Shown piece by piece: positions 10,842 to 21,107 of a stretch of 64,000 nucleotides of DNA (its first letter is position 1; each line of letters opens with the position of its first letter). Below the pieces are notes generated by a model, which saw only the letters and a program-made list of their open reading frames with translations, was not told where the DNA came from and did no database searches. Origin of the DNA: Selaginella moellendorffii (taxonomy: Eukaryota; Plantae; Lycopodiophyta). Position numbers and translations under genes: made by a program. The DNA lies in assembly GCF_000143415.4 (NCBI RefSeq), contig NW_003314298.1, forward strand, positions 62,001 to 126,000. Reading direction: 5' to 3'.

Positions 10842-13199
10842 TTATGCTTCTGTGCAATCGTCTTCCAGCTGCATCTCAAGGCTGTCTCCCTTGGACCACA
10901 AGGATCCCAGCTCGCCTCTTCGCCACCCTAGAGCAACGATTGTTCCTGGCGTGGCACAAAAGAGAAACCATCTCTCTCAAAATTTAGAACTTGTAAGCCA
11001 TACCCAGAGTGCAAGGTACGATGTAGAGGAGGGCAGGTTGTCCATGCCCATGCATCACGTTCAATGCAACGTCCGTAAGAAACAAACCTGTACAATTTCC
11101 ACATGACATTGTGTTCACAAAAGCCAGAGTATAATGGATGCTCACCCAGGCCATAGCCTATTATCGACCACAAAAAGTAACCATCTCGCAAGCTTTTTCT
11201 AGTCACTGTGTCGAACCTGCAATGGTGAGTGTTAAAAAATGACCTCTTGTATTCCCCATACCTCAGAGCAAAGGATATTAAAAGCCCTGGAAGTAGTATA
11301 TCACCAAAGCCTATGATACTGTATCCTCCCCAGGGGTCGTAAATCAGAGGTACTTTAAGGACCATTGGTATGCCTTCTCCAGCGGTTTTGTCACCCCGTG
11401 CAACCTGTGTGCATGGTTAACAATCCATGAAGATTTGCATCACATACATACCACTATCATAACACTTTGTTTGAAAATGAATGGGGAGATAAAAATCCAG
11501 AATATGTCGTAGAAGAAAGCGCATCCCAGAAGGACTGCCGACACCTGAGGGTTCCACAGAGCTCTTAGATAGAGTGTGTGTGTGTGCAACAAGTACTCAC
11601 CTTTATATTTGGAAGGTGCACAATCTGGAGAACAGTGACAATGAGAGCAATGCCCTGCAAAAACGTAGAGCCTCACTTAGATACTCATGACTGGGTCAGT
11701 ATGCCAATTGCACTCACTAGTATATCTTGAGCAATCCACGCAAAGTTTACATGCCGGTACACGGCCCACAGGACAGCGAAGGTGATGCAGAATGGTGACA
11801 CAAGCATTGAGAGAACTGAGACGCTACCAAAGACGGGAAGGACCACAAACTTTCGGCTTGTATGCGTAAACCACCTGGAATGGTTGAGCTAAGGCATATG
11901 TCAGGCACGAATCTAACTCACCTCGAAAGGAAAGCGACCAAGCAAGTTTGTAGCCCCTGTGCATACATAAGATGACGAAACTTTAGAACAAAGACACAAG
12001 TTTACCTCTACTCCACCAAAACAGAAGATGACGACCAGAAGCGTTAAGAACCATTTGGACATAAAAAAGTAGACGAGGATGAGGAACACCGAAGCAAAAA
12101 CCGCAAACAGGACTGCCGACGTAACGGTGACATAGAGACCATTGCCGGCTGGAGTCGCGGCCACCGTGGAGGTGTGAGTAAGCGGAGCGTCTGGAGCGTC
12201 CTGCGTCCACCACCCAACCGGGAACTCTAAAACTTAGTTTGCCCGCACACTGTGTACCTTTAGCCGTTTACAGCGCTCGTGAGCAGCCTCTTTTGCCTCC
12301 CAGGCAGACCAGAATGACGCACAGAGGATAGTGCCCATGGCGATGAGCCACAGGCATACTTCGGCAACATCCACCAGGGGCCTTCCAGGCGAATCCATAA
12401 TCACCCTGACTGGAACGAAAACATTGCAAAGTTGTGAAAACCATGTAGAGTTTCACCTTTCTTGTTGGCCTCCAATGCACTCTGGAGGCTGTTGCCTGCA
12501 GACATGGGCAAAATGGCTGTGGGGATTTTGATGTCCAAGGATGTGTCATTGTCGTAGCACACCATCTTGTAGAGCTCTGTTTTGTAACGTACCACCACCA
12601 CCTTGTATGGTCAGGCACGAGTGAGAGTTCCAAGCCTTACCTTCCCTGTCGTTGAAGACGAGCAAGGCCACAGCGCCGGCAGACTGGGCAACTCGAGCCT
12701 TGGTGGTGAAGGAGCAGCCACCCCTCTGGACCAGAGCAGCGCCTTCCAGCTGCACAAACCACAGCGCACCAACATTAACATTGCCTTTGAGGCCTGCGTC
12801 GGTACCACTTGCCCGCTGAGACGTGTTGACACAGCCATCCGGTGAATCCAGCAGAGCCAGGGGCAGGAAGTGTTCTTCACGCCCCAGCGTCTTGAAGGAA
12901 GCTCCAAACCTGGCACTGATCCCCACATACTCCTTGGATTCCACCGCGTCAATCCAATTCCTCACCTTCACCTGCCATAACTCTAACACGCCTCACTGCA
13001 AGCAAGCAAGCGCGGATCACGTTACCAATTCGAAGTTGTTGTCACAGCCCAGATGCTTGGGTGCATCCTCGTCATCGTGAGATACATCATTGTCTCCTCC
13101 TCCTCCGGTGGCGCCACATCTCGATATTAGCACAAAGAGCACCACCACCAAGACACGAGCAGCTCCCAGCTTGTTACTGCCCGGCGAAGAGAGCGCCAT
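10842..13199 (-). CDS. Signal peptide peptidase-like (SPPL) aspartyl protease with PA domain, multi-exon
   Basis: Signal peptide, [11 protein letters not shown] domain ([21 protein letters not shown]), [18 protein letters not shown] (GxGD) and QPALLY. Confidence 0.93.
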
Positions 13200-13362
13200 T
13201 TCTCCGGCCCAAGCCCACTCACGCTCTCACTCTCTGTGAGTTAAGTTACCCGTCCACCTCCATCCAATGCTTGCTGTCGCCATAGCCGACCCCTCCGTGC
13301 CCGTCAACTGACGGGCGTGCCCATCACCGTACGAGGTAAAAAAACATTCTTTAATCAGTAAG

Positions 13363-16300
13363 TTAAAACGCCTTTACAAGTTCGTTCTTCATGGCCAGGC
13401 CCAGGGGACGCAGCTCGGCTCCATCCTCCAAGCTGGATCCCGGGAGGAGAAGCGAGCGGGCGCCCACGAATGCGTACTCCCCAACGCCGTTGCTGCCAAA
13501 ATGCACGTCGCCGCCGCCCTCGTACACGTGACCAAAGAGTAGCGCGTCTCGCCCAATGCTGCTGCCGGTCTTGACGCTCAGGCGGTCCGGATTGAGAGCA
13601 TACAGTGTGTCCATGTACACACCCGCGGTGTCGATGCTCGCTCCCAGCTGCCGGAGGTAGCCTGTAGAGAGTGCCGAGCCTCTGGTGAGGTCGAGGAAGT
13701 AGCCGCACGCAACCGAGTTGACGCACTGCCACACCGTGTCCTGGAGGCTCCTCAATCCCCACAGCTCGCTCCTGCTCTTCTCCTGCACGCCCTTCCTTCC
13801 TCCAACCAGGATCCTCCTCGCTGAGATGCTGCCCAGGGACAAGACGAGAGCCGACACCATGTACGAGAGCAGGACGAGTGCCAGGAACAGCCAGTCGCTG
13901 CGGGGTGCTCGAGACGCGATCAACGCCGCCGGGAGGAGAGCTGCAAGCTGAGAGAGCCCGAGGAGAGTAGCGGGGGCCAACAGCTGCAAGAGTGGCTGCA
14001 TGCTTCGAATCAAACCGAACTTGAGCCTCGTTTTGGCAGTCGCCGTCGCCGTCTTGCAGTTGGTTTCCGGCAGCACTGCCACGTTGGGCGGAAGGCATCC
14101 GGATAGAGCAGGGCAACCGATGTTGCCGTCGTTGGAAATGTCATTGGCGAGAGGCACGTCTGAGTCTCTCAGGAGGGCTTTCCATGCACCGGGCAGCTCT
14201 GCTCCGTTCCTCACGTACTGAGCAATGTCGTAGGCCACCGACCTCCCGTGGTCTATGGACGCCGACTCCCGCAAGCTGGTTGCCGGGATCATGTCCAGGC
14301 TCGGCACACCGTTCCTGGGGTTGAACCTCATCGCCTCTGTCAGTGCGGGGTCGACAAGCTCGTCAAGGTGTATGGCGGCAACGTCCACGTAAGGGAAAGC
14401 TTGCTCGTCCCACGCGCGGGTGCAGTCGATAGCGAGGTCCCTCTCGGCGAGGCTGTCGGGAACTGGGCGTAGCTGGAGCTGGAGCACGTAGTCCACGCCT
14501 TGCGGGGACGCAAGCCTCCGTGCAAAGTCGTCTCGCAGATAGCTGGGTGAACGCTCGTCTTTGTCTCGTCGAGGCAGCGCGCCGGTGTCCGGCGGGAGCA
14601 CACCCTCCCGTGCAATCCGTCCTTCGTCAACCCCATATTGCGGATCCAGTGGCCTCATTCGGAACCTCACGTACCATTCTCGCTTGGGTGACGAAGCCGA
14701 CTTGAAAAGCCTGGAAACGTTGGAGTAGTAGTGCAGCTCGGCATATGAGTTGCCCAGACGTAGAGAGTCCCACACTGCATCGCCTCTGTGCGGGGAGTCT
14801 TTCACAATCTCCTCCCTGCGCTTGCTGCTCGTCGTCAACCACGTAACAAAGTCGGCAATATTTCTGGCGTAGAAAGCCTGGCCCGTCTTGAGCGTGAGAT
14901 CCACAAGTGACTCGTGAAGCGAACTGTGGTCGTGCCTCAGGATTCGCAGCGAAGCACCGCGGGCATCTGGCCTGGCATCGTCGTCCGAGCTCAAGCTGTT
15001 GCTGTGCCTCACAACAACCGAATACGACTTCCCCTTGGAGAAGACATCGTGGCGGGGAAAGCTGCTGTCCAGGTCTTCCAGCACAGTGAGGCGTCCCTTG
15101 CCACATATCCCAGCCCTGTGGAAGTACCTCGACTTGACGGAATGGCTCGTTTTGCCTATGTGAGCCGAGAGGTTGGCCACCGTCTTTCTGTATTCCGCGT
15201 CCATGGCCACAATCCTGCTGTCTTGCTCGTGAGCTACCGAGGCATGGTTGTATACCATTGTTGGATTCTCTACGCCCAGGTACACACCACCCTGCTTCAG
15301 TGTAAAGCCGCTCGTTGCTACAGACAAGGCTCCCAGCCACGAGCTTTCCTCCATGCAGGAGCCAGGCATAAGCACGCTCTGTGCTCCAACCACGCAGCCT
15401 GTCCCGACGTCAAGCCTCGCGTAACAACCGTTGTCACTGGTGATGACTTTTGCAAAGTCGCCCAAGTGAGATCCACTTCCCAGGTCCAGTAAATCTGGGT
15501 CCAGTATCGCGTTTATAGCTCGGACTGAAGCTCGGTCTCCAACCTTGGCACCTAGCACCCGCAGGTAGAAACACAAGGCTTCGGTGCCCGTGAGCAGGAA
15601 TGTAAATCTCGCATGTGTCGTTGCAAGGAGCCTGCGAACCAGCCAGAGACGATATCCAAAGCTCGAGTTCTTCCTCACTTCTCCCTTGCGTTCCAGCTTC
15701 CCAACCAGTATCCATTTCAGAAGCCAAGTCATCCAGCAGAGGCTGGCACCATAACCGATATAGGCACATCCCATGCACAGCACGAGCGCCAGCAGCTTCC
15801 CCTGAAGAGCAACGTATATCAAGTAGTCGACGATCGAGCTCGGGTCTTGAAACACTGAGAGCGGAATTGCAGCAGTCACGGCCCAAGGGAACGTTGACAA
15901 GAGCGATGACACTATATAGCCTGTTTGTGATTCCCTTGCTCCAGCCGGTAGGATACCGAGCTTGTCAACGAGCCACACAAAAACCACGTATCCGACCACC
16001 CCGGAGATCGCAGATACGAGGCTCACAACGTACAACCCGGCTGCTTGACACAATGTGTACAACATTGTGCTGTTCTTGTCCTGCAAAGACAAATGGTAAG
16101 AAGCCAAAAGAAATGAAAAGAAGCAATCACCTGTCGACGTGAGGGGTGAACTTTGGAAGAATCATCCTCAAGGTGACGAACTCCAAGCTGGCTGGTTCCA
16201 TCAACCTTACCCAGTGGAGACACCGACGTGGCCCTCAGGGATGCACCAAGGCCAATGAAAGAGTAGGGACCGATGGAACACCTCCGTCCTATTCTGATGG

Positions 16301-19300
16301 GCTTGAACTGGACAGCACCGGCTTTCACCTCGTGGCACTGCAGGGTTGCACCCTCTCCGATGGCAGCACCGTCACCCAGCACCACAAGCCAAGGGTCTGT
16401 AATATCTGTTGTCTCCAGCTCAACTCCGGATCCAATCTGTGCTCCCAGCAGACGGTACCACCAGTTGACAAAAACCGTTCCCCGCAACTGAGTCGCTACT
16501 ATCCTGGCCGATGCGAAATCCTGGAGCCTGTAGCATGTCCACCACCTTACGAAGTTGAGCGACCATAGCGGGACTGTGGTCCGAAGATGAAGCACCGGAA
16601 GCAGGAAGCTCGTCCCAAGACTGGCTGCCAACGCCGTGGCTGCCATGTAGAGCAACCAGCACAAGGGAGCACAGAGCACCGCAGCGACAACAGGCCGGTC
16701 TGCAACCAGGGACGTGAACTGCCTCAGGATAAACGCTGCAGGGACGAGGAGCGTCCATGCCACGTAAATGATGCCCAGGAGCTGTAGAAGAGTGATGCAC
16801 ACTTGGCGTTGGAGCGATGGAAGAATGCCGGATTCCAGCTGAGAGTCCGTCACGATCTCGCCCTCAAAATCGTCATCTGTATAAGGTCCCCCGCGGCACG
16901 ATGACAAGCTAGCTTTATCATCGATTTCAGTGCCCTGTTGCTGCTGCGTTACTACTGTCTTGCCGACGAGACCGTCCACCACGTCACACAGCTCAGATAT
17001 GCAACCAGCAGTGTAGATGTCGATGGCCGCAACGTGAACTCCCAGAAAGTTGGATAGCTTCTGTGATGCCCACACCACCGCAACGGAATCAAGGCCGTAG
17101 TTTGCAAAGCTTTGGGACGGCGACAGCTTGGACAAGTCGATGCCTGTCCGTTCGGAGATGATCTGGCAGATGAAGTTTGAGATCTCGGTCTTGCTCGGCC
17201 CCTTAGCCGAGACATCGGTTTCTGGTATCGCAGGTGGCACTACTGGCTGCGAAGACGTAGAGGACTTAGTGGTGAGCACCAGGCTCTCGACTGAGTCGGC
17301 AAGCTCTGAGATGCAGCCGGCCGTGTAGATGTCTATAGCAGCAACGTGAACTCCCAAGAAAGATGAGAGCTTGTGAGCGGCCCACACGACAGAGCTCGAA
17401 TCCAGTCCATAATCTGCGAAGCTTTTCGTGGAAAGGACTTGAGCCTGAGATAATCCCAACTTTTCAGCCAGGATCTCCGTCAGGAAGCTAGTAACCCCGG
17501 CTTTGCTACGAGCAACACTGGCAGCAGACGGTGGCGGCGTCGGTGGTATCACGCTAGGAGTCCCACTAAAAGTTCTCGACCTTCGAAGTCTTAGAATTTT
17601 CTTAGTCTTCTCAATCGTGGGACTTATGCTGTCCAGCCTGTCCTCAGTGAACTGCTTCAAACAGTCAAGCCTCCGTATCTTTCCCGATGAAGTTTTTGAG
17701 ATCGTTCGCGGCTTGACGAGCCTCACCGAAGCGACACTCAAGCCATGCTCACTCGCAACCATAGAGGAAATGTGTGCAGTGAGCTGCTCGGGATCAACCT
17801 TTGATTCGTCTCGCACTTCTGCAACCACCACCACCCCAACTTCGTCCTCGTCACAAACTTTGATCCCTTTGGAGTGGAGGGCTCGTCCAGGCGCACCAAA
17901 AGCAGCACAGCATCCAGGCCTGAGTGATCCGGAGCATGCTTCCACGGTCTTTTCAATGTCGGACGGGTAGACGTTCCGGCCCCTGATGATAATCAAGTCC
18001 TTGATCCGCCCAGTCACAAACAGCATGCCTTTGACCACCCTTCCCAGGTCGCCAGTCCTGAGAAACCTGTTAGCTTCTTCACCGCCTTCTAACCTTGCAT
18101 GAAAAGTGTCCTGACTGAGCCTCTCGTTTCCCCAGTAACCGGCACCATTGCTCGGACTTCTCACCCAAATCTCTCCCTCCACACCGTCTCCCACTTCCAC
18201 GCCAGTCTCTGGATCTACGATCCTCACATCCACGTCCGGGTTGCCCCTGTCCACATACCCGCAGCAAACCTTGCCTTGCCAGTCCACAACTAAAGGCCTG
18301 CCCCGCCCCCATGCAACGCTGACGAACACACAGTTCTCGGCCAGTCCATAACCAGGAGCAACAACCTCTTCCTTGAGCCCCGAGCTTTCCATGGTCTTGA
18401 GAAATCTCTTGAGCGTGGAGCTTCTTACCGGCTCGGCACTGACCATGAGGAACTTGAGGCACGAGAGCTGGTACGTGATGCCGGGTTGTTGGTTCATCTT
18501 GTTGACGACGAGATCAAACGCAAAGTTGGGTGCCGCGCTGTGCGTTGCCCCGTACTTGCTCATGGCCTCGAGCCACAACAAGGGCCTCCGGATGAAGTTC
18601 GTGGGCGACAAGAGAATGGCGGTGCCACCACTCACCAGCGCAGTGAAGAGGCCCCCGATGAGACCCATGTCGTGGTACTGCGGCAACCAGCTCACCAGCA
18701 CCGTCCTGGACGTGCTCTTGTACCGCCGCCGCATCAGCTTCACGTTGTGGATGAGAGCGGAGTGGGTGATGATGACGCCCTTGGGATCGCCAGTAGAGCC
18801 CGACGTGAACTGGAGGAAGCAGCATCTTTCACTCTCCTCGGCCTCCCCGCGACCCCTAAAGTAATCCTCGGCCTCTTTGTTTTGCTTGGAAACCCACAAG
18901 TCGGTGTGCATCCAGGGAAGCTTTGGCCACGACGGTCGCCCGCCGGACCTCGACAGCAAAGTGTCTCGGATTGCTGACGCGCGCACGGCGGTGTGGTAGG
19001 CGACTGTGGACAGGATGGCCTTGGCACCGCAGGCGGCTGCCACATTCTCCACTTTGGCCAGCGCATGGGAAGAAGAAGAGGAGCTCCCTCGACTCGCGAC
19101 GTCCGGAGGGATGAGGGGCACCGGCAACACCTATAGATAGCACACGAAGGTAAGCAAACAAAGCTTTCTCCTCTAGATCTCCACGACTTACATTGGCGCG
19201 CAGGCAGCCAAAGAAGGCCTCGATGAATTCCAGGCCGGGGTTGTAGAGGAGAAGCACTCGGTCCCCGTCATGGAGCGTGACCTTGTGGGTGACGAGATTG

Positions 19301-21107
19301 TGGGCGATGGTGTTGGCGTTGTTGTGGAGCTGAGCGTAAGTCCTGGAGCCTGATTCGTCACCCTTGTCGTCCAGCCAGGTGTAGAGGACCTTGTCCCTCG
19401 CCACGCTGTGCTTGGCATAGAAGTGGAGGTAAGAATCCAGGCATGGAAGGTCGGGAAATTCGCCGCCCGTGGCCTCACTCGTCACCTCCAAGTCGCCACC
19501 CTCGGCTTCATCAAGCTTGATCGCTGCGCCCGTGATCAAGTTCTGCAAAGTTTGCTTAAAGCTGAGAAACGCAGAAGAAAAAGTTCCACCTTGACTTTTG
19601 CGGGCGTTCCAAAGTTCTTGGCGATGAGGTTCATCGCGTACGCCGCATTGCGCTCCGTGAGCTCGAAAGCAAACAGGCCTCCTACATAGTAAGTATCGTT
19701 GCATCCTTGTAGCGATTCAAGCCGGTCGTATAATCCAGATCTCATATCTGTGAAACCAGAAAGAAACATGTAATGCGGGGATAGAAAATTGTAGTGTGTG
19801 TTTACCTTGCGAGCCAATGTGGGGGAAGTAGTTCCATTTTCTCTGCAAGACAATGCGTTCCACAGTGCCACCAATACGTGCCACGTCCTGGAGCAACAGC
19901 GCGGTCATCATCTCCTGGCTGACTTGAGCATTCCCATACGACCAAAAGAGATAGATGTTGGTGTCGGCATAGAATTTTTGCATGGCCACCGGGTGACCAA
20001 TCTCCTTTGCATCTTCAACATTGTCTTTGAAATAGTAAAATCCGGCCGGGAATTTATTCTCGAATCGCGAGATCTCCAGAACTGTTGTGTAGTAGTCCAT
20101 AGTCCGGACCCTGCTGAAGAGGCTGGCTTCTTCGTCTCCAAGTGTCATTAGCTCCGCGCCTGGTGGAGCAAAGGGTATCGCTCCCGAGATGACGATCTTG
20201 TCGAACTCGAGCTCCTCTGATTCCTCGCCCCCGTCCGAGCTTGAAGTGCAAACTGTGACTCCTCGGCCGGATCCTCGTCTCCGGATCTCCGTGACTCTGG
20301 TGTTCAATCGCACGCGAGGTAGCAGCCTCGCCACTCCTTGCCACAAGCCGGTGTAGCCGCCCTTGATCCTGCAAACCTTCCCAAACATTGAGGTGCGAAC
20401 GAACTCGTGCAAATACGCATAGGGGATATCCTGCTCGTGTGGGAAGCCATATCCAGAAGCCGTGTAACCAGTGGCAACAGCCTCTGGTATTCTTCCCATG
20501 CCGTGCTTGGCCGCAAATTCGGCTGCTGTCTCCGGTGCAAGGCTGCTAAGTGCGTGAACTCCAGTTTTACCAGTTGATGCTGCTTGTGCCTGATCAGAGA
20601 CAATATCTATTATCAAAACAAAGCCCCTCGATGCATGGTTAAATCACCTGAAGGTCAAGAGTGATCTGGATCATGGAGATGTAGTCTCTGGCTATCCCAA
20701 GATCTTGGTACGTGCCAGTTTTGGAGTCGACAAGGCTGAGCTTGTGAGCCGCCATGTCTTCCATGCCAACCCTGGCCACTTGCGCGAGATGCTTGATGTT
20801 GGGAGCACTCTCCCGGGCAATCACCTGACCACCCAAGTCATACGGTCGGCCTGCCAACCGTGTCAAAATTTCACCAGTGATTGATTAGTGTTGAAGCATG
20901 TATATTACCTTGGATGTCCACGCTCTCACACATTCCTCCCACGGTGTGGTGCTTCTCAATAAGTGTGACTTGCTCATATCCCAGCTTCCACAGCGCATAC
21001 GCTGCGGAGACACCGCTGGGTCCTCCCCCGACAACGCAGATCCTGCTGCTTCTTGGGAGCGACGGGTGAAGCTCCTCCAGCAGCTCATGGACTGCCGACG
21101 CTTCCAT
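13363..21107 (-). CDS. NRPS-like multidomain enzyme, ~2470 aa: FAD oxidoreductase (PAI-like) - fatty acyl-AMP ligase - ACP - ACP - TM/LbH - TM/LbH - catalase-related AOS-like heme domain - TM/LbH
   Basis: Seven exons join in frame through GT-AG introns: 21107-20909, 20850-20648, 20589-19806, 19747-19590, 19542-19192, 19130-16131, 16080-13363 (7413 nt). Motifs: VVGGGPSG, FLQFTSGSTGDPKG, WLPQYHDMGLIG, YGLAE, RTGDLG, KTSSGKIRR, YGLDS twice, RYFHRAG, RHSN, RSVAY, and hexapeptide repeats. Confidence 0.9.

What the first reader, a model, noticed from the sequence alone, without database searches (positions are those of the whole stretch)
14210..15140. Embedded coral-type catalase-related AOS domain with the distal Asn apparently replaced by Lys
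Seen: RYFH (His codon 15118-15120), RHSN...DDARPDARG, LHYYS, YLRDDF...LQLQL and RSVAYDIAQYVR (Tyr codon 14230-14232). These are colinear with the Plexaura homomalla cAOS sequence as I recall it (RHANL...DDAGADAR, LYYYS, RVAVYTWVQHLR). Where cAOS has MNTG (distal Asn) this protein has LKTG (14887-14889). Established: plant AOS/HPL enzymes are CYP74 P450s, not catalases. Inference: a second, non-CYP74 hydroperoxide chemistry in a plant, possibly with a changed reaction.
Basis: partly seen in the sequence, partly recalled or inferred. Interest (0 to 1): 0.85.

Follow-up and report, generated by a model that had tools for sequence, protein, structure and literature searches.

The report
Plant catalase-fold heme domain with distal lysine
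A Selaginella gene for a giant membrane-bound fatty-acid-processing enzyme carries a heme domain folded like the coral allene oxide synthase, and all land plants sampled have a lysine where that enzyme class normally has an asparagine; its reaction is unknown.

Summary
Window 14140-15201 (minus strand) encodes a 354-residue catalase-related "mini-catalase" domain. Coral cAOS is its best solved relative by sequence (1u5u, E 2.8e-26) and by fold (Z 39.6, rmsd 2.1 Å over 320 residues). True catalases score Z ~26.

All heme-binding residues align: three Arg, the proximal Arg/Tyr and the distal His. The distal Asn137 position is Lys (AAG, 14887-14889).

The change is not peculiar to this gene. All 101 land-plant homologues examined have Lys there, and none of 79 non-plant homologues does.

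- The residue before the distal His is Phe, not the Thr of the "Thr-His" hallmark of fatty-acid-hydroperoxide enzymes.
- The polypeptide has no lipoxygenase domain.
- The plant domain groups with bacterial proteins that fuse this domain to a PAI-like flavoprotein, a fatty acyl-AMP ligase and a carrier protein, not with coral cAOS-LOX.

Spliced transcript contigs show the domain is expressed on one mRNA with the ligase, carrier and Pls-like membrane parts.

The window is Selaginella moellendorffii (EFJ28539.1). A 2021 paper noted the plant ligase-catalase architecture as "function unknown". The scan recorded the same observation on another piece of this genome (s1-405460).

AOS activity, heme binding and the role of the Lys are untested.

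The parts
14140..15201 (-). Catalase-related (cAOS-fold 'mini-catalase') heme domain, 354 aa; the structural core matching 1u5u is about 14197-15201
   Evidence: PDB phmmer 1u5u E 2.8e-26; Pfam PF00199 37.7 bits; AF2 pLDDT 95.8; VIA-align Z 39.6, rmsd 2.1 Å over 320 aa to 1u5u
15118..15123 (-). Phe27-His28: the distal His (cAOS His67) preceded by Phe where cAOS has Thr66 and true catalases have Val
   Evidence: Alignments (RYFH/RATH; ERVVH in catalase 1si8); census: F-H in 98 plant sequences, T-H in LOX-fused and stand-alone kin
14887..14889 (-). Lys105 (AAG) at the position of the distal Asn137 of cAOS
   Evidence: Lys in 101 of 101 land-plant domains and 0 of 79 others. No variant at this codon in RNA contigs
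14230..14244 (-). Proximal Arg320 (14242-14244) and heme-ligand Tyr324 (14230-14232), equivalent to cAOS Arg349 and Tyr353
   Evidence: alignment; nearly invariant columns R320 and Y324 in A2
15127..15129 (-). Arg25, equivalent to the heme-coordinating Arg64 of cAOS
   Evidence: residue list of cAOS in PMC5617202; nearly invariant in A2
15001..15009 (-). Arg65-His66-Ser67 (RHS). Arg65 is equivalent to cAOS Arg102. Ser67 aligns with the Ser of the catalase RFS motif, where cAOS has Ala
   Evidence: alignments to 1u5u and, more weakly, to 1si8; R65 invariant in A2
14209..14211 (-). Arg331, equivalent to the heme-coordinating Arg360 of cAOS
   Evidence: invariant column R331; for the cAOS residue list
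15217..15783 (-). Pls/PosA-type hexapeptide (LbH) soluble domain directly upstream of the heme domain, preceded by hydrophobic segments
   Evidence: TIGR02353 E 4.1e-32, ORF residues 109-297; Hexapep hits; hydropathy scan
13366..14139 (-). Linker, a pair of hydrophobic (TM-like) segments and the last LbH domain; stop codon at 13363-13365
   Evidence: homologues carry Hexapep hits C-terminal to the catalase domain
16080..16129 (-). 50-nt GT..AG intron joining the FAAL/ACP/LbH exon to the exon that holds the heme domain
   Evidence: Joint seen in contigs of four runs from four studies; the spliced frame is open, 1905 aa with one terminal stop
16130..19130 (-). Exon with a fatty acyl-AMP ligase (FAAL), two carrier (PP-binding) domains, a TM pair and the first LbH domain
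   Evidence: Pfam AMP-binding 7e-51, PP-binding x2, DIP2-like AMP domain; NCBIfam FAAL families 1e-88 to 1e-73
19717..20616 (-). Part of the N-terminal PAI-like FAD domain of the same gene (context only)
   Evidence: Residues 1-470 of the annotated protein P0094 hit 2b9w, P. acnes PUFA isomerase, at E 2.2e-27 (identity of 2B9W); this ORF's translation lies within P0094

Best explanation
The region encodes a functional, Tyr-ligated heme domain with the truncated catalase fold of coral allene oxide synthase. It is inserted between the second LbH domain and the last TM pair of a Pls-like membrane module, in a protein of about 2,470 residues ordered PAI-like FAD domain - FAAL - ACP - ACP - Pls-like C-terminal module. 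It belongs to a lineage of catalase-related domains that travel with a PAI-like flavoprotein, a FAAL and a carrier protein, found in myxobacteria and in unassigned, bacterial-looking sequences, rather than with a lipoxygenase. Proposed mechanism (inferred): the FAAL loads a polyunsaturated fatty acid onto the carrier domains. The heme domain then binds a peroxide derived from or acting on that acyl chain, most likely a fatty-acyl hydroperoxide and alternatively H2O2. It cleaves the O-O bond at the Tyr324-ligated iron with His28 as acid-base. The ammonium of Lys105 takes the place of the Asn amide as the polar partner of the distal oxygen or of an anionic group. The Pls-like LbH domains then transfer the modified acyl group to an acceptor at the membrane. 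Shown here: the fold, the heme-binding residue set, the Lys and Phe substitutions and their fixation in land plants, the architecture, and transcription with splicing. Inferred: heme binding, the substrate, the product and the role of the Lys.
For: Fold and homology. All cAOS heme residues listed in PMC5617202 (R64, R102, R360, H67, Y353) align with identical residues and are invariant or nearly so in 101 sequences. Lys105 and Phe27-His28 are kept in homologues from liverwort (Ile-His there), lycophyte, conifer, eudicots and grasses at only about 40-56% overall identity, which argues for selection on a working site. Tree: plant clade 100*, nested in a 99* clade of FAD-fused domains; bacterial hosts; shared domain set FAAL/CAT/FAD/ACP. 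The flavin domain's best solved relative is a PUFA isomerase and the ligase is FAAL-type, so the pathway substrate is most likely a fatty acid. Some members of the same clade are fused to a LOX (L009; P0131, P0134). mRNA: a 5.4-kb contig joins the FAAL, ACP, Pls-like and heme parts with the intron removed.
Against: No biochemical data exist for any plant member; the literature search found only an architecture note with function unknown. The Thr of the Thr-His hallmark is absent and the distal Asn is absent, so classic cAOS chemistry cannot be assumed. There is no LOX domain in cis, so the source of a hydroperoxide is unexplained. PAI-type isomerisation is redox-neutral and makes no peroxide. 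The Marchantia orthologue appears to have His in place of the proximal Tyr, so the ligand set is not absolutely fixed.
Confidence: 0.5

Rival explanations
1. One reading: the domain is a true allene oxide synthase or hydroperoxide lyase-type enzyme acting on LOX-made 9- or 13-hydroperoxides. This would give plants a second, non-CYP74 route, with the Lys only tuning rate or product.
For: The closest solved structure by a wide margin is cAOS (Z 39.6 against 27 for the next class). [quoted passage not shown] 2008 and the comment in PMC5617202). Plants have abundant LOXs (general knowledge). Some clade members are LOX fusions.
Against: Thr66 is replaced by Phe, so the Thr-His hallmark is not met. 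There is no LOX in cis. The plant clade is separate from all characterised AOS and HPL members. The architecture suggests a carrier-tethered rather than a free-acid substrate.
Confidence: 0.2
2. The domain works with H2O2 rather than a lipid hydroperoxide. It would be a catalase, peroxidase or peroxygenase partner of the amine-oxidase-family flavoprotein domain, either removing H2O2 made by flavin re-oxidation or using it to oxygenate the tethered acyl chain.
For: The residue before the distal His is hydrophobic (Phe), as Val is in true catalases. Ser67 aligns with the Ser of the catalase RFS motif, where cAOS has Ala. The T66V mutant of cAOS evolves O2 from H2O2 (PMC5617202). The heme domain co-occurs persistently with an amine-oxidase-family FAD domain in bacteria and plants.
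Against: The FAD domain's closest solved relative is an isomerase that makes no H2O2. The fold is much closer to cAOS than to catalases. The catalytic Asn of catalases is missing.
Confidence: 0.2
3. The domain is not a catalyst. Lys105 would ligate the iron (six-coordinate Tyr/Lys heme), or the domain would be heme-free, serving as a redox or gas sensor, an electron-transfer module or a structural spacer within the Pls-like module.
For: Both distal polar residues of cAOS other than His are changed. A Lys side chain is longer than Asn and could reach towards the iron (inference). Degenerate second copies of the domain exist in bacteria (P0088 residues 387-720 lack His and Tyr).
Against: The distal His and all heme-anchoring residues are conserved across land plants, which is more than a spacer would need. 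A sensor role has no precedent in this fold.
Confidence: 0.1

Closest known systems
Coral catalase-related allene oxide synthase (Plexaura homomalla cAOS, PDB 1u5u / 3dy5)
   Same: Truncated catalase fold of about 350 residues (Z 39.6, rmsd 2.1 Å over 320 aa, 26% identity). Identical heme-anchoring Arg triad, proximal Arg/Tyr and distal His.
   Different: Thr66 is Phe and Asn137 is Lys. It is not fused to a PLAT-LOX but embedded in a FAAL-ACP-Pls-like membrane protein. It falls in a different, well-supported clade. Activity is unknown.
Bacterial FAAL - catalase-related - PAI-like FAD - ACP - TE/reductase proteins (e.g. Archangium gephyra, locus L001; uncharacterised)
   Same: Nearest non-plant relatives of the domain (35-40% identity, 99* clade). 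Phe-His distal pair. Same companion domains: FAAL, PAI-like FAD, carrier.
   Different: The domain order differs and release is by a thioesterase or reductase rather than a Pls-like membrane module. The Asn position is Thr, Asn, Ser, Ala or Val, never Lys. No function is known for them either.
True heme catalases (e.g. 1si8, 4e37, human 1dgb)
   Same: Shared core fold (Z about 26), distal His, proximal Tyr/Arg, hydrophobic residue before the His, Ser of the RxS motif.
   Different: About 130 residues shorter. The catalytic Asn is replaced by Lys. Only 16-21% identity. Not a stand-alone soluble protein.
33-kDa catalase-related protein of Mycobacterium avium subsp. paratuberculosis (PDB 3e4w / 3e4y)
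   Same: Another solved mini-catalase of similar size (Z 27, rmsd 3.0 Å over 286 aa).
   Different: Far less similar than cAOS (18% identity), and a stand-alone protein.
Epsilon-poly-L-lysine synthetase type NRPS (Pls/PosA, TIGR02353)
   Same: The host protein has an adenylation-family domain, carrier domains and alternating TM pairs with hexapeptide-repeat soluble domains. TIGR02353 matches at E 4e-32.
   Different: Pls has no heme or flavin domain and activates lysine, not a fatty acid (general knowledge). The TIGR02353 score (111 bits) is far below its cut-off of 423.

Membership tests
Catalase-related hemoproteins of the cAOS / mini-catalase type | Truncated catalase core fold (about 330-370 aa, no C-terminal catalase domains) | tested here: met
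   AF2 pLDDT 95.8; 1u5u Z 39.6, rmsd 2.1 Å over 320 of 354 residues; Foldseek E 3e-27
Catalase-related hemoproteins of the cAOS / mini-catalase type | Proximal Tyr ligand with its partner Arg, and three heme-coordinating Arg (cAOS Y353, R349, R64, R102, R360) | tested here: met
   Aligned to Y324, R320, R25, R65 and R331; invariant or nearly so; residue list from PMC5617202
Catalase-related hemoproteins of the cAOS / mini-catalase type | Distal His | tested here: met
   His28 aligns with His67; present in all plant sequences but one probable mis-model
Catalase-related hemoproteins that react with fatty acid hydroperoxides (cAOS, cHPL and cyanobacterial kin) | Thr immediately before the distal His ('Thr-His connection') | tested here: not met
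   Phe27 in Selaginella and 97 other plant sequences, Ile in Marchantia. The hallmark is known here only from the title of Mashhadi et al. 2016 as cited; the paper itself is not held
Catalase-related hemoproteins that react with fatty acid hydroperoxides (cAOS, cHPL and cyanobacterial kin) | Distal Asn (cAOS Asn137) | tested here: not met
   Lys105
Catalase-related hemoproteins that react with fatty acid hydroperoxides (cAOS, cHPL and cyanobacterial kin) | Fusion to, or pairing with, a lipoxygenase that supplies the hydroperoxide | tested here: not met
   No LOX domain in the 2,385-aa annotated protein or in any plant homologue's architecture. A LOX acting in trans was not examined
Catalase-related hemoproteins that react with fatty acid hydroperoxides (cAOS, cHPL and cyanobacterial kin) | Heme binding and conversion of a fatty acid hydroperoxide to an allene oxide or aldehyde | not testable with these tools
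   Needs expression, spectroscopy and enzyme assay
True (monofunctional heme) catalases | Full-length catalase architecture with the Val-His / Asn distal set | tested here: not met
   Z about 26 with only about 285 aligned residues of chains of 480-500; Lys instead of Asn, Phe instead of Val
Catalase-related domains of FAAL / PAI-like-FAD / carrier-protein fusion proteins (uncharacterised bacterial lineage) | Placement within that clade, and co-occurrence with FAAL, PAI-like FAD and carrier domains in one polypeptide | tested here: met
   Tree: 99* clade of 50 rows, plant subclade 100* (quick search, SH-aLRT only); architectures; FAD domain against 2b9w E 2e-27
Pls/PosA-type membrane NRPS terminal module (TIGR02353), host of the domain | Score at or above the curated cut-off for the terminal module | tested here: inconclusive
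   111 bits against a cut-off of 423, two partial stretches. The module is interrupted by the heme domain. TM-pair and LbH alternation seen

The most novel reading that the evidence does not exclude
Land plants have kept, since before liverworts and vascular plants diverged, a bacterial-type, lipoxygenase-independent fatty-acid assembly line. Its catalase-fold heme domain uses a distal Lys (with Phe-His), seen in no other homologue examined here, to perform a peroxide-dependent reaction on a carrier-protein-tethered polyunsaturated acyl chain. The result would be an unrecognised class of plant oxylipin-like or lipo-conjugate metabolites made at a membrane.
Probability: 0.25. Interest if true: 0.85.

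Novelty: new variant of a known kind. Interest (0 to 1): 0.6.

Why it matters
Plant oxylipin chemistry downstream of hydroperoxides is attributed to CYP74 P450s. A conserved catalase-fold heme domain in land plants, sitting in a FAAL/carrier/Pls-like megasynthase, points to an unexplored lipid pathway. The fixed Lys-for-Asn and Phe-for-Thr changes give a defined, testable active-site variant of a well-studied fold. They bear on how distal residues choose between H2O2 and lipid hydroperoxides. The family has tractable members (Marchantia MpACOS18, tomato, Eucalyptus), so genetics and biochemistry are feasible. The apparent bacterial affinity of the whole domain set also raises a question about gene transfer into early land plants.

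Tried and rejected
- A single-sequence AlphaFold2 run gave an unusable model (pLDDT 32). It was replaced by a run on the 101-sequence alignment.
- The search for related loci with the broad alignment A2 found no conserved stretch. It was repeated with a bacterial subgroup alignment.
- Four primary papers are not held in the library: Gao 2008 on Asn137, Mashhadi 2016 on Thr-His, and Teder 2015. Their claims are used only through titles and through the summary in PMC5617202.
- Rejected, chance motif match: E 2.8e-26 and Z 39.6.
- Rejected, bacterial contamination of the assembly: a 50-nt GT..AG intron is spliced out in transcript contigs from four studies, and orthologues occur in many plant genomes.
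- Rejected, pseudogene or decayed domain: the frame is open, the heme residues are conserved and the region is transcribed.
- Rejected, true catalase: see the membership test.
- Rejected, sequencing error at the Lys codon: RNA contigs agree, both Selaginella copies agree, and all plant orthologues have Lys.
- Gene context of the bacterial relatives gave only a neighbouring P450 and no clue to the product.
- Literature searches for any functional study of the plant family returned nothing.
Full report
**1. What is in the sequence**

On the minus strand, window 13363-16107 is one 914-codon ORF.
- RYFH, with His at 15118-15120
- RHSN...DDDARPDARG
- LKTG, with Lys (AAG) at 14887-14889
- LHYYS
- YLRDDF...LQLQL
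- GRSVAYDIAQYVR, with Tyr at 14230-14232

The 354 residues encoded by 14140-15201 pass the Pfam Catalase threshold (37.7 bits against 25). In a search of all PDB sequences they hit coral allene oxide synthase first (1u5u, E 2.8e-26; 3dy5, E 2.4e-25). True catalases follow only at E ≥ 1e-3.

**2. Fold**

A single-sequence prediction failed. With an alignment of 101 homologues (A2), AlphaFold2 gave pLDDT 95.8 and pTM 0.93.

| Solved structure | Z | rmsd / aligned residues |
|---|---|---|
| Coral cAOS, 1u5u | 39.6 | 2.1 Å / 320 |
| M. avium 33-kDa catalase-related protein, 3e4w | 27 | 3.0 Å / 286 |
| True catalases | about 26 | about 3.3 Å / about 285 |

These values are; Foldseek agrees. The domain is a cAOS-type mini-catalase.

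**3. Heme site**

PMC5617202 lists the cAOS residues: heme-coordinating R64, R102 and R360; distal T66, H67 and N137; proximal Y353. In this domain they correspond as follows:

| cAOS residue | Here | Status |
|---|---|---|
| R64 | R25 | conserved |
| R102 | R65 | conserved |
| R360 | R331 | conserved |
| H67 | H28 | conserved |
| Y353 | Y324 | conserved |
| R349 | R320 | conserved |
| T66 | F27 | changed |
| N137 | K105 | changed |

The conserved residues are invariant or nearly invariant in A2.

The Lys lies in the strand motif D-L-x-[LM]-[NK]-T-G. Its D, T and G are nearly invariant and there is no gap within four residues, so the equivalence to Asn137 is firm at the alignment level.

I could not measure the geometry, because the model's coordinates are not exposed.

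One further detail: Ser67 (RHS) aligns with the Ser of the catalase RFS motif, where cAOS has Ala. This comes, and that stretch of the alignment scores weakly.

**4. The Lys is a family trait**

The window is Selaginella moellendorffii. Its protein is EFJ28539.1 / D8RHJ0, 2,385 aa, annotated "Carrier domain-containing protein". A second near-identical copy lies on another scaffold.

Homologues at 49-56% identity occur in Cryptomeria, Eucalyptus, tomato, Nicotiana, Cajanus, Lolium and many others. Marchantia (MpACOS18) is at 39%. Most are named "uncharacterized" or "linolenate 9R-lipoxygenase-like".

I took a census of 180 full-length domains:
- Lys at the Asn137 position occurs in all 101 land-plant sequences and in none of the 79 others.
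- 98 plant sequences have Phe-His and Marchantia has Ile-His.
- LOX-fused and stand-alone relatives mostly have Thr-His with Asn.
- An intermediate group that looks bacterial has Phe-His with Thr, Asn, Ser or Ala, or Ala-His with Val.

Other plant-only fixed residues include Tyr26, Arg77 (two residues before the conserved channel Asp79), Asp317, Gly319 and a three-residue insertion.

**5. Relationships**

I built a maximum-likelihood tree of 85 domains (quick search, SH-aLRT support only).
- The plant sequences form one clade (support 100).
- That clade sits inside a 99-supported clade of 50 domains. Nearly all of these are fused to an amine-oxidase-family FAD domain, often with a FAAL and a thioesterase or reductase.
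- The genome scan found this type in myxobacteria (Archangium gephyra, Polyangiales, Myxococcaceae). Its two cyanobacterial hits were weaker; the one examined (Amazonocrinis, L009) is a LOX fusion.
- Cnidarian cAOS-PLAT-LOX proteins fall in the other 99-supported clade.

"Coral-type" is therefore right for the fold but not for the lineage. A few members of the FAD-fused clade are LOX fusions, such as the cyanobacterial locus L009.

**6. The host gene**

Upstream ORF 16023-19130 encodes a FAAL (NCBIfam fatty-acid-AMP-ligase families, E 1e-88 to 1e-73), two PP-binding domains, hydrophobic segments and a hexapeptide domain.

The ORF holding the heme domain also matches the Pls/PosA NRPS terminal module TIGR02353 (E 4e-32, well below its cut-off).

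The N-terminal 470 residues of the annotated protein hit 2b9w at E 2.2e-27. 2B9W is the Propionibacterium acnes polyunsaturated fatty acid isomerase.

A hydropathy scan shows TM-like segments alternating with LbH domains. The heme domain follows the second LbH domain and precedes the last TM pair and the third LbH domain.

Patil et al. [quoted passage not shown] No other paper on this family was found.

**7. Expression and gene model**

Contigs from four runs in four studies lie on 13300-19200 and all skip 16080-16129. On the minus strand this is a 50-nt GT..AG intron, which marks the contigs as transcripts.
- One contig of 5,453 nt joins 13436-16079 to 16130-18938. The heme domain is therefore on the same mRNA as the FAAL, carrier and Pls-like parts.
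- The spliced frame is open for 1,905 codons.
- The GenBank model omits 15496-15750 (85 residues of an LbH region), which the transcripts cover without a joint. The true product is about 2,470 residues.
- No variant touches the Lys, His or Tyr codons.

**8. Interpretation**

The conserved heme-anchoring set and distal His argue for a working heme site. They have been retained in lineages as far apart as liverworts and flowering plants, at only about 40-56% overall identity.

The companion domains (FAAL, PAI-like flavoprotein, carrier proteins) argue that the pathway substrate is a fatty acid, probably polyunsaturated and carrier-tethered.

My best reading (confidence 0.5) is a peroxide-cleaving heme enzyme acting on such an acyl chain, with Lys105 replacing Asn as the polar distal partner.

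Which peroxide it uses is open:
- For a lipid hydroperoxide: the overwhelming similarity to cAOS, and the LOX-fused members within the same clade.
- For H2O2: the loss of Thr, a hydrophobic residue before the His as in catalases (cAOS T66V gains catalase activity), the catalase-like Ser, and the constant pairing with an oxidase-family flavoprotein.

Asn137 mutations in cAOS are reported to change rate but not chemistry (title; comment). The Lys alone therefore does not rule out cAOS-like chemistry.

**9. Verdict**

This is a new active-site and architectural variant of a known fold. It is conserved across land plants, present in databases, noted once in the literature as an architecture, and functionally uncharacterised.

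The scan recorded the same observation on another piece of this genome (s1-405460), and the whole-gene architecture on this window (s1-419356).

Noticed in passing
window 15496-15750 (-): The GenBank protein model EFJ28539.1 (P0094) leaves out 85 residues of a hexapeptide-repeat region as if they were an intron. Transcript contigs from several runs cover the stretch without a joint, and homologues keep these residues.
   Followed up: yes
P0255 / P0099 (Marchantia polymorpha MpACOS18), domain residues about 1830-2185: The liverwort orthologue keeps the distal Lys but has Ile-His instead of Phe-His. It apparently has His in place of the proximal Tyr ligand (ARALLHDLL against GRSVAYDIA), and RYS instead of RHS.
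   Followed up: partly
window about 19150 (-): Transcript contigs from three runs leave the genome sequence at 19150 with the same following letters. This indicates a further intron boundary between the FAAL exon and the upstream exon.
   Followed up: no
P0088 residues 18-369 and 387-720 (metagenomic, looks bacterial): Two tandem catalase-related domains precede the FAD and carrier domains. The second has lost the distal His, the proximal Arg and the Tyr, so it is probably a degenerate, heme-free copy.
   Followed up: partly
L009 7932-10400 (+) (Amazonocrinis nigriterrae, cyanobacterium): An 822-aa catalase-related/lipoxygenase fusion. Its 822-aa counterpart in the census (P0131) has Thr-His with Ser at the Asn position and lies in the same broad clade as the FAD-fused and plant domains.
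   Followed up: partly
L001 6195-13040 (+) and 14696-15907 (+) (Archangium gephyra): A 2,281-aa ORF that holds the catalase-related match (its kin are FAAL/catalase-related/FAD/carrier/thioesterase proteins) lies next to a cytochrome P450 gene. The product of this putative cluster is unknown.
   Followed up: partly
window about 10900-13200 (-): ORF fragments downstream of the gene look like exons of a signal-peptide-peptidase-like protein with a PA domain. This is judged only from the ORF translations.
   Followed up: no
window 13363-19130 against P0094: The window's product differs from the deposited Selaginella protein at 15 of about 1,820 aligned residues (one in the heme domain, Leu/Val). 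This suggests the other haplotype or another accession.
   Followed up: partly
homologues P0001-P0084 (angiosperms): Many RefSeq and transcript-derived angiosperm proteins contain only the Pls-like/catalase-related/Pls-like part (about 600-870 aa), while Eucalyptus, Cryptomeria and Selaginella have the full fusion. It is unclear whether the gene is split in some angiosperms or the models are fragmentary.
   Followed up: no
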